From IMG/VR virus record IMGVR_UViG_3300023174_000036, positions 292,313-356,312 of that record: a stretch of DNA of 64,000 nucleotides; one strand, 5' to 3'. A program made the translations under genes and the position numbers. Below are positions 2,707 through 17,029 of this stretch, in pieces. Every line of letters starts with the position of its first letter. Within the stretch, counting starts at the first letter, position 1. Under the pieces are notes generated by a model that worked only from the letters and a program-made list of their open reading frames with translations, was not told the origin of the DNA and made no database searches.

Positions 2707-3004
2707 ATATCCTTCTTGCGAAATATTCCAGTTTATCTTTTGGATAACTATTAAACCTTGGACCGTCTGTGTTAGTTTTCTCTAAGAAATCTGCCAATTC
2801 AGGTTCCGCGATATTATCTACTGCAACTTGTTCAAATGCACCTTGTGAATAATAAGTGTACAATTCGTCGATGGGTTTCATCTCGGGTCTTGCTATTATT
2901 CTATTCCAAATTGAGTTTGATTCTTGTTGTTCTTCGTTTTGTATGTAGCCTATTCTCGAGCCTTGATCTGTATCGTCCCTGTTTCGTCCTTGATCATGTA
3001 AGTC
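2666..3004 (-). CDS. probable -1 frameshift extension of the 2950-4200 protein (ORF track: 2666-2881)
   Basis: Frame is open from the A9G run at 3004-3013 to the stop at 2666. Confidence 0.6.
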   Translation of the reverse strand, partial: DLHDQGRNRDDTDQGSRIGYIQNEEQQESNSIWNRIIARPEMKPIDELYTYYSQGAFEQVAVDNIAEPELADFLEKTNTDGPRFNSYPKDKLEYFARRIYELRKNYPDNTAG

Positions 3005-4200
3005 TTTTTTTTTGACTCTTCTGATGCGGGCTCAATAACTTCTGTCAAATCAGGTTTGATTCTGTCACCTGTTACTTCTATGAAAGTATTGTCAGCAGTT
3101 ATTGTTTCAGGATGATAGCGTTTTGCCTCTTCTTGTTTTATAGCTTCATGTTCCAACTCGCGTTCAGCTTGTTCGATCATCTTGTTCCATTTTTCTAGCT
3201 CTGACTCTTCAGTGAATGGTACTGAAGGTTCCTCCGATGCTGTTATATCACCTCCTAGTGCAGTCAACGGTGTTTCGCTTGGAACTTCTGTGTGTGTGGG
3301 TTCTATGACAGTAGGTTCGATAACTATGCTATTTCCGCTCTCCGTAGTCAGGCTGTCATCCTCTGCTGATTCTTCTTTGGGAATATATTCTTGTGGTTGA
3401 GGTACAATGTCGTTAATACTTACAGGTACTGGTTCGACTTCTTCTTTCTTCCAACCAAAAGTCATCTGTGCGGCCAGCAACATGATAACTGCTAGCGGAT
3501 CAAACACAACAACAATAAGAACAATGATCCATGTTACTGCTTTTTCCAACATGTTTTCATCTGCGCCATGATCGCCGTAGATGAATTTAGCAATATATTT
3601 TATCGGACCAACTTCCGCTTCAACTTTTCGAACTTCGGCCGCAATTGGCGCACGTTCTTCGTTGAGTCCGGCGATTTTCTTTTGAGACTCTGCAATGTCT
3701 TGAGCGATGCGACTACGTTCTTTCTGCTGGGCTTTTCGAATGGCAACGGCTTTTTCTGCGCCCTTTTCATCCGAACTGCGACCCATAACTTGGTCCACCG
3801 ATTCATCAAGCTGTTTGAGCACTTTGCGATTAGCATCTATGTTTTCTTTTTCTGTTTTGATTTTTTCGTCGTATATGGCAATCTTACTTTGAACATCGCC
3901 GCTGACTAAATTTTGATCATTGTGTGCTTTACTTAGGAATCCAAAGATGCCCATCGATGTTATAATCATTAACACAATCACCGCAGTGATCATATAATAT
4001 TTTATAAAACGTGGAGCACGTTCCCAATTGGCTTTTAACCAAGAGGCACACACAAGTTTACCAACTTCCAAAGCTGAACCCATAATGATAATTGGAATTA
4101 CTGCCGCTGAAAATATTGCGGTAAGACCTACTACTGAGTAATAGATCGCTACCGCAGATATTGTTAAGCCAGTAAGAAGTAGTAACCAGGCTAAAATCAT
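2950..4200 (-). CDS. membrane protein with three N-terminal TM helices, a long coiled coil, a fourth TM helix and an acidic tail
   Basis: Hydrophobic segments and heptad-rich middle in the translation. Confidence 0.8.
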   Translation of the reverse strand: MILAWLLLLTGLTISAVAIYYSVVGLTAIFSAAVIPIIIMGSALEVGKLVCASWLKANWERAPRFIKYYMITAVIVLMIITSMGIFGFLSKAHNDQNLVSGDVQSKIAIYDEKIKTEKENIDANRKVLKQLDESVDQVMGRSSDEKGAEKAVAIRKAQQKERSRIAQDIAESQKKIAGLNEERAPIAAEVRKVEAEVGPIKYIAKFIYGDHGADENMLEKAVTWIIVLIVVVFDPLAVIMLLAAQMTFGWKKEEVEPVPVSINDIVPQPQEYIPKEESAEDDSLTTESGNSIVIEPTVIEPTHTEVPSETPLTALGGDITASEEPSVPFTEESELEKWNKMIEQAERELEHEAIKQEEAKRYHPETITADNTFIEVTGDRIKPDLTEVIEPASEESKKKTYMIKDETGTIQIKARE

Positions 4201-14890: not shown

Positions 14891-15607
14891 TCAGTTTTCT
14901 CTGTAGTACTGCTCCACCCTATTCCACCACTGCTTTTCCCAGTGAGCAAACATGTCTGGGGTAAGAATAAACTCCTGATAAGCCGGTTCTCCCCAAACCA
15001 TAGGTGTAATTTCGGGAGGTTTTACGCACATGAATACTACACCTTTGCGAATGTTGGTCTTATGTACTTCGTTATGAGCCAGCGCATAAGCCACCATTTG
15101 CAAGTAATAGTCTTCAATCCACTCTTCTTTTTTGGGTTTGTTGGTTTGTTTATGGTCCATGATTGCACCCTCATTCAAATGAAGTCCTACACAATCAGTA
15201 GTTCCCGCATATAAACCTGGATAATACAAACCAACTTCAACACCCCACACTTCGTTAACGTTTTTAAGTCCATGTTCGATAATGTGTTTGGCCATCTTGT
15301 GACTTTGCACACTGTATGGATTTGATCCTGGATCGTTGAGTGTGCCTTGCACAATGTAATCTTCCAAATACTTGTGCATACGTGTACCGCGGCTGGCAGC
15401 TTCGGTAACAATCTCAGTGGCTTTCTTTTCGCCCACAGATCGCCGCCATGCTTGTAAGGCGGCAACTTTTTCTGCTGGTTTGGTTTTGTCTAGTATTGTT
15501 GTAACGGATGGCAGTTTGCCACCGTCTGGCGTGGCGTATAAACGCTTGCCTTCTACACTTTCTCTGTTTAGGGGAGTGTAGTCATATCTTTCAGTTAATA
15601 AGGTCAT
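14891..15607 (-). CDS. PD-(D/E)XK exonuclease (Cas4/MGME1-like)
   Basis: LPSVTTIL, RGTRMH, YAGTTD, DHKQT, YYLQMVAYA. Confidence 0.85.
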   Translation of the reverse strand: MTLLTERYDYTPLNRESVEGKRLYATPDGGKLPSVTTILDKTKPAEKVAALQAWRRSVGEKKATEIVTEAASRGTRMHKYLEDYIVQGTLNDPGSNPYSVQSHKMAKHIIEHGLKNVNEVWGVEVGLYYPGLYAGTTDCVGLHLNEGAIMDHKQTNKPKKEEWIEDYYLQMVAYALAHNEVHKTNIRKGVVFMCVKPPEITPMVWGEPAYQEFILTPDMFAHWEKQWWNRVEQYYREN

Positions 15608-15644
15608 ACAGTATGTTAAACTATATGACCTTATTTGTCAATGC

Positions 15645-15997
15645 TTATTTGCCTAATTTGGTTGCACGTTTTGCCATTTTCTCAACTTCGCCGGTTTTTT
15701 CTCCGCCTTGTTGTTGTCTGTTTTGTTGATTATTGGTTTTTAACACAATGCCTTGACCATCAAATCGATCAATGAACTTTTTCAGTAATGGGCCTTCTTG
15801 TGGATCATCCCAACGGGCAACAAATGCATCATATGCTTCAGCATCACTGTCACCCAGTGTGGGCATGTCTCTATTGGCCAATTCAGTGTTTAATGTATCC
15901 CATCGAAGATTGCCTTCGATTCCGTTAGGGCCTTGATTGTTTGCGTCTGATTGAAGAACCCAAAGAATACGTTCTAAGGGTTCTATGTTCTCAATTA
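15645..15997 (-). CDS. probable -1 frameshift extension of the 15995-16990 protein (ORF track: 15645-15881)
   Basis: Open frame from the A10 run (15998-16007) with no canonical start codon until 15881. Confidence 0.65.
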
Positions 15998-16990
15998 TTT
16001 TTTTTTTGAAGCTAACAACATGCCCAACTTGCGGCTATAGTCAATGCTTTCACGCTTCTCACGACCCACTTCAGGTGCTGGAGGAGTTTCTTCTGCTGGT
16101 GCGGCGCCTGACATGTCAGCGGCCATGCCTGCCATTGCATCACCTCCCATGGAAGGCAATCCGCCTGTTGGTGCAGGTGCGCCCATTGTTGGTGCTTCAC
16201 CGCCTGATACTAAAGATAAGCCTGTTGATAGACCGGTTCTTGAAGTTTCTAATGCTGTGTATACTGCCTCTAATGCAGGTTTAACTGCATCTTGATATTG
16301 TTGTGCAACATCACTTCCTTGAGTTTCTCTTATAGAGTCCATTAGTTCAAGCAATTGTTCTGCTTTCATTGCGGCCACATCTTCTAGCCAGCCTGTAATA
16401 CGGTCTACCATGTCTTTTGTAGCCATGATGATTTCGGCCTTGTCTTCTTCGCCTTCAGCAAGAATATAACTTGCTTGTGATTCTGTTAAGTCGTAACGAA
16501 TTGATAATTCTGCTTTGAGTTCTGCGTTGTCGCTTTCGCCCAATGTCATTCGTTGAATTGCACTGTTGATCCAATTTGATGGAACTGAAAACCCTTTAGC
16601 ACGTTGTCCAATAATGGTTGCTTTGTATTGGTTAACACTTTCATTTTTCTTTTGTTTTTTCATTGTTTCTTCTTCGTCTTGTGATTCATCAAGATCGCAC
16701 TCACATGGCGCTTTGTGGCAATCACTGCATTTGCCTTCTTCGCGTTCCATGATTTCTTGATTGATAACATCAAGCAAAGCACGAGTCTTTTGATAAGCTG
16801 GACTTCCACTCAATGAGTCAAAACTTTCATTCATTTCGAGTTGGCTCATTTCAGTGCGTAGTTTGTTTTGCACGTCTGAAAGCTGAACATCGTTGAATTG
16901 TTCCAGTTTCAATTTGTATCCAAAGTTCTTAGCTAGACTTTCGTTGAGTCTTTTGCTAGTAACAGGTTTTGATAGTTCTCTAATTTGCAT
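15995..16990 (-). CDS. probable head-internal/scaffold-like protein
   Basis: Helical and acidic, many L/M-x-E sites, MQIREL N-terminus, late promoter. Confidence 0.6.
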   Translation of the reverse strand: MQIRELSKPVTSKRLNESLAKNFGYKLKLEQFNDVQLSDVQNKLRTEMSQLEMNESFDSLSGSPAYQKTRALLDVINQEIMEREEGKCSDCHKAPCECDLDESQDEEETMKKQKKNESVNQYKATIIGQRAKGFSVPSNWINSAIQRMTLGESDNAELKAELSIRYDLTESQASYILAEGEEDKAEIIMATKDMVDRITGWLEDVAAMKAEQLLELMDSIRETQGSDVAQQYQDAVKPALEAVYTALETSRTGLSTGLSLVSGGEAPTMGAPAPTGGLPSMGGDAMAGMAADMSGAAPAEETPPAPEVGREKRESIDYSRKLGMLLASKKK

Positions 16991-17029
16991 GATGGCGTCC
17001 TAAGATATCTTATTGTGTATTTATACTTT

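What the first reader, a model, noticed from the sequence alone, without database searches (positions are those of the whole stretch)
15645..16990. Second -1 frameshift candidate: A10 run at the stop of a scaffold-like head protein
Seen on the minus strand: GCT TCA AAA AAA AAA TAA (A10, 16007-15998). The -1 frame continues IIENIEPLERILWVLQSDANNQGPNGIEGNLRWDTLNTELANRDMPT...KRATKLGK (about 117 codons). It has an in-frame TAG shortly upstream of the run and no ATG/GTG/TTG until 15881, so the first ~39 codons are reachable only by slippage or an unusual start. The junction KKIIE also recreates an I-x-E protease site. Inference: frameshifting sets a fixed minor ratio of a fusion whose C-terminal domain is cut free inside the head.
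Basis: partly seen in the sequence, partly recalled or inferred. Interest (0 to 1): 0.68.

Follow-up and report, generated by a model that had tools for sequence, protein, structure and literature searches.

The report
Conserved -1 slip site in jumbo phage
A late gene of an uncultured 356-kb freshwater jumbo phage ends in a run of nine or ten A's plus a stop codon that is invariant in dozens of diverged relatives, and a slip back by one base there is the only way to make a conserved, start-less 117-residue domain as a C-terminal extension: a new case of programmed frameshifting in a phage, not an assembly error.

Summary
On the minus strand, ORF 16990..15995 (331 aa) ends TCA AAA AAA AAA TAA. 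The -1 frame runs on for 117 codons to 15645, and its first ATG/GTG/TTG is at 15881.

In 79 related viral contigs (56 distinct junctions; upstream protein 56-100% identical) the downstream domain always lies in frame -1. The string [T/C]C-A9-[G/A/C]-TAA never varies, although neighbouring third codon positions do. The extension is conserved as protein from its first residue and folds confidently. Two independent DNA data sets reproduce A10, so it is not a homopolymer error.

More distant phages have the same two genes side by side, but there the second has its own ATG and there is no A run. A T4-type late promoter (TATAAATA) precedes the gene in 56 of 61 relatives.

Best reading: programmed -1 recoding that makes a 331-aa protein and a roughly 448-aa fusion. 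I favour ribosomal slippage on A_AAA_AAG/A next to the stop, helped by a downstream hairpin. Transcriptional slippage on the A run is not excluded.

"Scaffold" is not supported: a gp22-position gene sits in the head module about 227 kb away and is unrelated. The I-x-E cleavage idea and the product ratio are untested. An identical TCAAAAAAAAAG site, also conserved, lies in another gene at 3005-3013.

The parts
17018..17025 (-). TATAAATA, T4-type late promoter -10 element, 27 nt upstream of the ATG
   Evidence: Sequence. An exact TATAAATA lies 31-41 nt (motif start to ATG) upstream of the homologous ATG in 56 of 61 distinct relatives; the other five have C/GATAAATA. The whole genome has only 15 exact copies, about 10 of them 17-43 nt upstream of an ORF start.
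16998..17001 (-). Shine-Dalgarno-like AGGA, 7 nt upstream of the ATG
   Evidence: TAGGA/TAGGGA is kept at this place in the relatives.
15995..16990 (-). Frame-0 gene: a 331-aa all-helical protein with a disordered Gly/Ala/Pro/Met linker (residues 265-310) and a basic C-terminal helix ending SKKK
   Evidence: ORF list. Alignment of 53 homologues, mean column identity 60%. AlphaFold2 model, mean pLDDT 73.6. phrog_14154 'virion structural protein' matched by 49 of 53 members, best E 7e-12. More than 2300 metagenomic homologues; the 120 best listed are 252-342 aa (all but one 313-342) and none has the fused length.
15995..16009 (-). Recoding signal TC-A10-TAA (family consensus [T/C]CA AAA AAA AA[G/A/C] TAA): two overlapping X_XXY_YYZ heptamers followed directly by the frame-0 stop
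   Evidence: Invariant in 56 distinct junctions: N is G in 44, A in 8, C in 4; the stop is always TAA. Controls on Lys, Ser and stop codon usage. A10 reproduced without indel by DNA contigs of two independent runs.
15645..15998 (-). -1 frame extension of 117 codons plus stop: a winged-helix-like domain (residues 1-90) and a disordered basic tail ending MAKRATKLGK. It has no start codon of its own before codon 40
   Evidence: Translation. It lies in frame -1 in all 79 loci that hold both parts. Conserved from the first residues (E3, P7, L8, L12, Q16). AlphaFold2 pLDDT 85-96 over residues 31-90. Winged-helix domains top both fold searches, but weakly (best Z 5.2).
15955..15984 (-). Stem-loop AGAACCC..(AGAA CGTA TTCT)..GGGTTCT, beginning 10 nt after the stop codon; a candidate frameshift stimulator
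   Evidence: The 70 nt downstream fold with mean z -3.0 in 54 relatives, against -0.8 for the 70 nt upstream. For the named 14-bp helix, 72.5% of cells are paired against 31-45% when the partner is slid, and no shuffle of 500 reaches the covariation score. At least 10 of 14 pairs form in 36 of 53 sequences; the spacing after the stop is 8-14 nt in 37 and 17-27 nt in 16.

Best explanation
This is a programmed -1 recoding site at the 3' end of a late phage gene.

Normal decoding ends at TAA and gives a 331-aa helical protein that ends SKKK. A fraction of expression events move back one base on the run C-A9/10. They read ...S-K-K-K-[V/I/L]-x-E... and continue for 117 codons, giving a fusion of about 448 aa. 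The extra part is a small winged-helix-like domain with a basic tail.

The route I think most likely is ribosomal slippage of tRNA-Lys on the overlapping heptamers A_AAA_AAA / A_AAA_AAG. It would be favoured by the adjacent frame-0 stop codon and, in most family members, by a stem-loop 8-14 nt further on. RNA polymerase stuttering on the A run, which adds one A to the mRNA, would give the identical protein and may contribute.

Shown: the anatomy, its conservation, the lack of any other way into the domain, the DNA run length, and the late-promoter context. Inferred: that the fusion is actually made, its proportion, which of the two slippage routes acts, and that both products are virion or assembly proteins that may be trimmed by the phage's T4-type prohead protease.
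For: - Frame: in all 79 related loci with both parts, the domain is in frame -1 of the upstream gene.
- Motif: 14 of the 15 bases of [T/C]CAAAAAAAAA-N-TAA are identical in all 56 distinct junctions, the leading T/C in 54, and only N varies, while flanking third positions have majority-base frequencies of 0.34-0.61.
- Codon controls: elsewhere in the same genes Lys is AAG 32% of the time, other KKK runs are broken up (27 of 28 have A runs of 6 or fewer), and the domain's own stop is TAA in only 42 of 61.
- No own start: the first start codon in the domain's frame lies 2 to 320 nt after the stop and is not conserved. Public gene calls begin at many different internal Met residues, profile positions 5 to 46.
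- Coding from residue 1: E3, P7, L8, L12 and Q16 are 90% conserved or more. Helix 7-21 and strand 30-32 are part of the predicted fold.
- Out-groups with the same gene order have the two genes separate, with an ATG, an SD (AGGA) and no A run. In L171 the upstream homologue (E 1e-34) ends ILSGR*. L172 has an AGATGA overlap. So both the KKK tail and the A run are specific to the start-less clade.
- DNA: contigs from two independent studies cross the run with A10 and no indel.
- Downstream structure with covariation.
- A second gene of the same genome carries the same TCAAAAAAAAAG with a conserved -1 peptide. In three relatives that site is A8G, which still holds the A_AAA_AAG heptamer.
- Late promoter conserved in 56 of 61 relatives, and no promoter motif inside the gene.
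Against: - No protein or ribosome data exist: the fusion has not been observed.
- The hairpin is absent or different in about a quarter of relatives, and its distance from the slip site varies (11-23 nt from the heptamer). That is looser than classic bacterial -1 signals.
- No conserved upstream SD-like stimulator was seen.
- Conservation reaches beyond one heptamer (A9, not A6G), which is what transcriptional slippage would also require.
- The RNA data were assembled contigs only. One RNA contig stops exactly at the last A of the run, as a length branch would cause, but coverage is low.
- The -1 frame relation alone could be inherited from an ATGA-type overlap like that in the out-group L172.
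Confidence: 0.85

Rival explanations
1. Transcriptional slippage is the main route. The RNA polymerase that transcribes late genes stutters on the template T9/T10 and adds one A to part of the mRNAs. Ordinary translation of those mRNAs then gives the same fusion.
For: - Nine A's are invariant, not just a heptamer: even the third base of the preceding Ser/Pro codon is always A.
- N can be G, A or C, which does not matter for polymerase stuttering.
- The same A9 occurs in a second gene where no stop follows the run.
- A runs of 9 or more are otherwise almost absent from the genome.
- In RNA run X4 a contig ends exactly at 15998, the last A, which is where a graph branch between A10 and A11 would cut it. 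DNA contigs of similar depth cross the run.
- From established knowledge: A9 in Thermus dnaX and in IS elements works this way (review PMC5009743).
Against: - The downstream hairpin with covariation has no known role in polymerase slippage; the known stimulators lie upstream, where the mean z is only -0.8.
- Three relatives of the second site have A8G, which keeps the heptamer but shortens the run.
- The invariant TAA directly after the run is not needed for stuttering.
- The other RNA contig (X16) carries A10 and runs 5 nt past the run.
- Contigs cannot show minor variants.
Confidence: 0.3
2. The domain is a separate protein made by termination-reinitiation or by a non-canonical start at the junction (ATA/ATT/GTA), as a leftover of the ATGA-type coupling seen in out-groups. 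No fusion is made.
For: - In out-groups the domain is an independent gene whose ATG overlaps or abuts the upstream stop, in one case in the same -1 register.
- A few relatives have ATG as the second -1 codon (L029, L060).
Against: - No start or near-cognate codon is conserved at the junction. Many relatives read GTA AAT GAA.
- The SD present in the out-group is absent here.
- This does not explain why nine A's and TAA are invariant while other Lys runs in the same genes are broken up.
Confidence: 0.05
3. It is an artefact or a DNA-level variant. Either the true gene is one continuous ORF (A11 here) and the assemblies miscount the homopolymer, or the run is a phase-variable tract with in-frame and out-of-frame subpopulations.
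For: Homopolymers are error-prone and mutable, and one extra A would fuse the frames.
Against: - Contigs of two independent DNA runs from different studies give A10 with no indel.
- All 79 loci from dozens of samples need the same -1 shift, and none is in frame.
- The 120 best of more than 2300 homologous gene calls are 252-342 aa (all but one 313-342), and none has the fused length.
Confidence: 0.03

Closest known systems
E. coli dnaX tau/gamma -1 frameshift (A_AAA_AAG) and Thermus dnaX A9 transcriptional slippage
   Same: The slippery sequence is the same (A_AAA_AAG in 44 of 56 relatives). A stop lies close to the shift site and there is a downstream stem-loop. As with the two dnaX solutions, a run of nine A's leaves both the ribosomal and the polymerase routes open.
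   Different: In dnaX the shift leads quickly to a stop and a shorter product; here it bypasses the stop and adds a 117-residue domain. No conserved upstream SD-like stimulator was found, and the hairpin spacing is longer and variable. The proteins are unrelated.
Phage lambda G/GT-type tail assembly chaperone frameshift (conserved in long-tailed phages)
   Same: A conserved -1 shift near the 3' end of a late phage gene gives a short product and a C-terminally extended one. The shift is conserved across diverged phages while the sequences drift.
   Different: The gene is not between the tube and tape-measure genes; its neighbours are an exonuclease, a tail spike and ribonucleotide reductase. 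The products are about 331 and 448 aa rather than about 140 and 280. There is no homology. The slip site sits directly on the stop codon.
T7 gene 10A/10B, and Listeria phage PSA/A118 capsid and tail proteins extended by a frameshift at the 3' end
   Same: Recoding at the end of a structural gene adds a C-terminal extension to part of the copies.
   Different: Different slippery sequences and, for PSA, the opposite direction (+1). Here a virion role is only inferred. The added part is a domain that other phages encode as a separate gene.
T4 prohead core and internal proteins (gp22, IPs, Alt) processed by gp21 at L/I-x-E
   Same: The genome has a Peptidase_S77 (gp21-type) protease and a gp23-type capsid protein. 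The gene has a T4-type late promoter. The protein is helical and acidic and has conserved L/I-x-E motifs (L15-N-E17, I80-M-E82, and [V/I/L]-x-E at the junction).
   Different: There is no sequence or profile similarity to the genome's own gp22-position protein, and the gene is not in the head module. The number of L/I-x-E motifs is about what the composition predicts (my estimate, about 6 expected). Cleavage is untested.

Membership tests
Programmed -1 ribosomal frameshift site | Slippery heptamer X_XXY_YYZ in the correct phase of the upstream frame | tested here: met
   TC[A AAA AAA] and [A AAA AAN] are in phase in the window and in all 56 distinct junctions.
Programmed -1 ribosomal frameshift site | Downstream -1 ORF that encodes conserved protein and has no initiation signal of its own | tested here: met
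   The domain is conserved from residue 1. The first start codon is variable, 2-320 nt downstream. There is no SD.
Programmed -1 ribosomal frameshift site | Signal conserved at synonymous sites across diverged relatives | tested here: met
Programmed -1 ribosomal frameshift site | Stimulatory RNA structure 5-9 nt downstream, or an SD-like element upstream | tested here: inconclusive
   A hairpin with covariation is present in about 70% of relatives, 8-14 nt after the stop in most but 17-27 nt in 16 of 53. No conserved upstream element was found.
Programmed -1 ribosomal frameshift site | Trans-frame protein detected | not testable with these tools
   The phage is uncultured and no proteome or ribosome profiling data exist for it.
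Transcriptional slippage site | Homopolymeric A or T run of about 9 or more | tested here: met
   A10 here; A9 or A10 in all relatives.
Transcriptional slippage site | Run-length heterogeneity in RNA but not in DNA | tested here: inconclusive
   Only assembled contigs were available. DNA contigs cross the run unchanged. One RNA contig ends exactly at the run, and another carries A10.
T4 gp22-type scaffolding core protein | Homology to gp22-family or gp22-position proteins, and a location between the prohead protease and the major capsid gene | tested here: not met
   The gp22-position gene is at genome 80667-81767, between the protease and the capsid protein. hhalign against it gives probability 0.4%. 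The gene studied lies at about 308 kb.
T4-type late gene | TATAAATA promoter element a short distance upstream of the gene | tested here: met
   Window 17025-17018; conserved in 56 of 61 relatives.
Lambda G/GT-type tail assembly chaperone | Position between the major tail/tube gene and the tape-measure gene, with small acidic G-like and T-like products | tested here: not met
   The neighbours are small unknown ORFs, a PD-(D/E)XK exonuclease and a pectate-lyase-type spike. The products are two to three times larger.
Winged-helix domain (the -1 extension) | H1-S1-H2-H3-S2-S3 fold with a significant structural match | tested here: inconclusive
   The order of secondary-structure elements fits. 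Winged-helix domains lead both searches, but only at Foldseek E 0.3 and Z 5.2. Atlas TM is 0.38-0.45 to named winged-helix families.

The most novel reading that the evidence does not exclude
This phage lineage uses the 12-mer TCAAAAAAAAAG as a reusable recoding cassette in at least two unrelated late genes. It evolved the cassette by converting a translationally coupled gene pair (ATGA overlap in out-groups) into a slip-linked fusion. If the slippage is carried out by the late-transcription polymerase complex, it would be a transcription-level stoichiometry control specific to the late phase of a T4-like jumbo phage.
Probability: 0.25. Interest if true: 0.75.

Novelty: new member of a known kind. 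Interest (0 to 1): 0.6.

Why it matters
Outside the tail-chaperone genes, well-supported conserved frameshifts in tailed phages are few. This one comes with a large natural data set: more than 2300 homologues, 56 distinct junctions, and out-groups that lack the signal.

It changes the annotation of a widespread freshwater jumbo-phage family. The 60-120-aa ORFs called downstream are truncated pieces of a fusion.

It also gives a clean system for asking whether A9-type sites act on the ribosome or on the polymerase, and how a coupled gene pair turns into a frameshift fusion.

Tried and rejected
- INPHARED phages: megablast and tblastn found no match for either part. The conserved core alone gave only E=2 hits. 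No cultured relative was found there.
- Pfam: nothing above threshold for either part.
- PDB sequence profiles: nothing.
- Foldseek PDB for the 331-aa model: only generic helical hits. The Atlas returned only its own family.
- RNAalifold on the junction alignment gave no consensus structure. I therefore named the helix by hand and tested it with controls.
- The protein-feature Atlas search of the domain gave scores of 0.81 or less, which is uninformative.
- Long out-group proteins that carry the domain (P0185 and others) have no Pfam or PHROG family.
- Counting L/I-x-E motifs as evidence for protease processing was rejected, because the count is about what the composition predicts.
- A homopolymer error, a phase-variable tract and a non-canonical start were considered and rejected; see the rival explanations.
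- Two literature searches for a described jumbo-phage frameshift of this kind found none.

Full report
**1. The observation**

The window is the last 64 kb of a 356,312-bp IMG/VR virus record, estimated 96% complete. On the minus strand, ORF 16990..15995 encodes 331 aa and ends GCT TCA AAA AAA AAA TAA. The A10 run is at 16007-15998.

The -1 frame reads ...TAG-PQVGHVVSFKKK-IIENIEPLERILWVLQSDANNQ...KRATKLGK-stop. There are 117 codons after the run, down to 15648. The first ATG/GTG/TTG in that frame is the TTG at 15881.

The run is the longest homopolymer in the genome, and only four runs of 9 or more exist in 356 kb.

**2. Comparison with relatives**

Cultured phages gave nothing. IMG/VR gave 80 loci whose upstream protein is 56-100% identical.

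- In all 79 loci that hold both parts, the downstream domain (30-60% identical outside the closest strains) lies in frame -1 of the upstream gene.
- The junction is the most conserved DNA in the region. In 56 distinct junctions the string [T/C]CA AAA AAA AA[G 44 / A 8 / C 4] TAA is invariant. Third codon positions on either side have majority-base frequencies of about 0.34-0.61.
- Controls from the same genes: Lys is AAG in 32% of codons, and 27 of 28 other KKK runs are interrupted so that no A run exceeds 6. The domain's own stop is TAA in only 42 of 61, against 61 of 61 at the junction.
- The first possible start in the domain's frame lies anywhere from 2 to 320 nt after the stop.

**3. The start-less part is coding**

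The extension is conserved from its first residues: [V/I/L]-x-E-x-x-[D/E]-P-L-x-x-x-L-x-x-x-Q-S. E3, P7, L8, L12 and Q16 are each conserved at 90% or more.

AlphaFold2 with this alignment gives a compact domain over residues 1-90, with pLDDT 85-96 for residues 31-90. Helix 7-21 and strand 30-32 both lie before the first start codon of the window. A disordered basic tail follows.

A profile search of 1.84 billion representatives found 440 relatives. Most are 60-120-aa gene calls that begin at the first Met available, at profile positions 5, 8, 10, 15, 28, 38, 46 and so on. That is the signature of a domain without its own start.

**4. Not an artefact**

Contigs of two independent DNA runs from different studies cross the run: X2 over 15428-16409 and X3 over 15013-16041. 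Neither shows a difference or an indel. None of the 79 loci is in frame, and none of the 120 best of more than 2300 homologous gene calls has the fused length.

**5. Out-groups**

In more distant phages with the same gene order (this pair, then a PD-(D/E)XK exonuclease, an Mtd_N/pectate-lyase spike, and ribonucleotide reductase), the domain has its own start.

- In L171 the upstream homologue is 460 aa (E 1e-34 over the C-terminal 164 residues) and ends ...RRLARILSGR-TAA. An SD (AGGA) and ATG AAG CTG TTC GAG follow. There is no A run and no KKK tail.
- In L172 the two genes overlap as AGATGA.
- In these lineages the domain stands alone (111-119 aa) or heads longer proteins of 261-771 aa.

So the A run, the Lys tail and the loss of the start go together in one clade. 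The conserved adjacency argues that the two products work together. The -1 register by itself could be inherited from an ATGA overlap. The evidence for slippage is the invariant run plus the missing start.

**6. Mechanism**

C-A9-N holds two overlapping heptamers in phase, A_AAA_AAA and A_AAA_AAG (or A/C). The second is the dnaX heptamer (established knowledge; review PMC5009743). The frame-0 stop follows at once.

The 70 nt downstream fold better than shuffles (mean z -3.0 in 54 sequences), while the 70 nt upstream do not (mean z -0.8). For a 14-bp helix that I named by hand (window 15984-15955), 72.5% of cells are paired against 31-45% with slid partners. Cells with compensatory changes number 40, against 15.5 expected, and no shuffle of 500 reaches the observed covariation score.

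The helix is not universal. At least 10 of 14 pairs form in 36 of 53 sequences. It starts 8-14 nt after the stop in most and 17-27 nt in 16. I therefore call it a probable stimulator, not a proven one.

Transcriptional slippage stays open. Nine A's, not six, are invariant. The RNA data were contigs only: one RNA contig ends exactly at the last A of the run, as a length branch would cause, and another carries A10.

Favouring the ribosome are the hairpin, the invariant TAA, and the A8G variants at the second site, which keep the heptamer. Given that recoding occurs, my split is about 0.55 ribosomal, 0.3 transcriptional, and the rest both.

**7. What the proteins are**

*Upstream protein.* It is all-helical with a disordered Gly/Ala/Pro/Met linker (residues 265-310) and a basic C-terminal helix. 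It has no Pfam or PDB relative. phrog_14154 ('virion structural protein') matches 49 of 53 members, best E 7e-12.

A T4-type late promoter, TATAAATA, lies 27 nt before the ATG and is conserved in 56 of 61 relatives, with an SD between them. No such motif lies inside the gene.

The genome has a Peptidase_S77 prohead protease, a gp23-type capsid protein and, between them, a 366-aa gene in the gp22 position. That protein is unrelated to this one, and the head module is about 227 kb away. So 'scaffold' is not supported. 'Late, probably virion or assembly protein' is a reasonable inference.

*The extension.* It looks like a winged helix: the MCM8 WH domain at Z 5.2, then ORC2, Fur, Trans_reg_C and TrfA-type families. 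The scores are weak, so DNA binding is only a lead.

*Protease cleavage.* [V/I/L]-x-E is kept at the junction, and L15-N-E17 is kept even in the distant homologue. Cleavage by the protease is possible but untested.

**8. Second site**

The same TCAAAAAAAAAG lies at window 3013-3005 (minus strand) inside ORF 4200..2950 (416 aa). The -1 frame there is open for about 110 codons.

In 47 distinct relatives, C-A9-G is kept in 40 and A8-G in 3. A conserved -1 peptide (DLHDQG...GYVQNxEQ...W) follows the run, and there is no adjacent stop. The family therefore seems to use this cassette at least twice.

**9. Verdict**

The recoding interpretation is strongly supported (0.85). The scaffold, cleavage and ratio parts are not supported or untested. 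This is a new, well-conserved member of a known kind of system. No paper describing it was found.

Noticed in passing
window 3005-3013 (minus strand), ORF 4200..2950 and the -1 frame down to about 2680: A second TCAAAAAAAAAG lies inside a 416-aa gene with N-terminal membrane helices. The -1 frame is open for about 110 codons. In 47 distinct relatives the run is A9G in 40 and A8G in 3, and a conserved -1 peptide (DLHDQG..GYVQNxEQ..W) follows it. Here no stop codon adjoins the run. This is probably the scan's 'first candidate'.
   Followed up: partly
L171:4617-7392, L172:1-407, and protein P0185 (771 aa): In more distant phages with the same gene order, the winged-helix-like domain has its own ATG. 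It stands alone (111-119 aa) or heads proteins of 261-771 aa. The upstream homologue there lacks the KKK tail and the A run. P0185 ends ESMEYMRLSIEYNKIKS, which resembles the ESIDYSRKLGML helix at the end of the window's 331-aa protein.
   Followed up: partly
window 16949-16935 (residues 14-18 of the 331-aa protein) and genome 80667-81767 (residues 305-309 of the gp22-position protein): Both proteins contain R-L-N-E-S in a similar 12-residue context (VTSKRLNESLAK and VKTERLNESFEK). This could be a shared recognition context for the T4-type prohead protease. It is not statistically significant as homology.
   Followed up: no
window 15600-15632 (minus strand): An inverted repeat, AAGGTCATA...TATGACCTT, lies just after the stop of the -1 extension and covers the ATG (15607) of the following PD-(D/E)XK exonuclease gene. 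It could be a terminator or a translational control hairpin.
   Followed up: no
window 16700-16730 (minus strand; residues 87-97): A Cys cluster, C-x2-C-x4-C-x-C (GKCSDCHKAPCEC), is present in about half of the family and replaced by a Lys-rich segment in the rest. The out-group homologue carries DUF3008 (PF11450) in this region.
   Followed up: no
window 15995-16017, as laid in runs X2 and X4: High-depth contigs (130-167x) from another, much more abundant relative match only the slip-site 23-mer and then diverge. The same motif is therefore present in the dominant phage of those lake samples.
   Followed up: no
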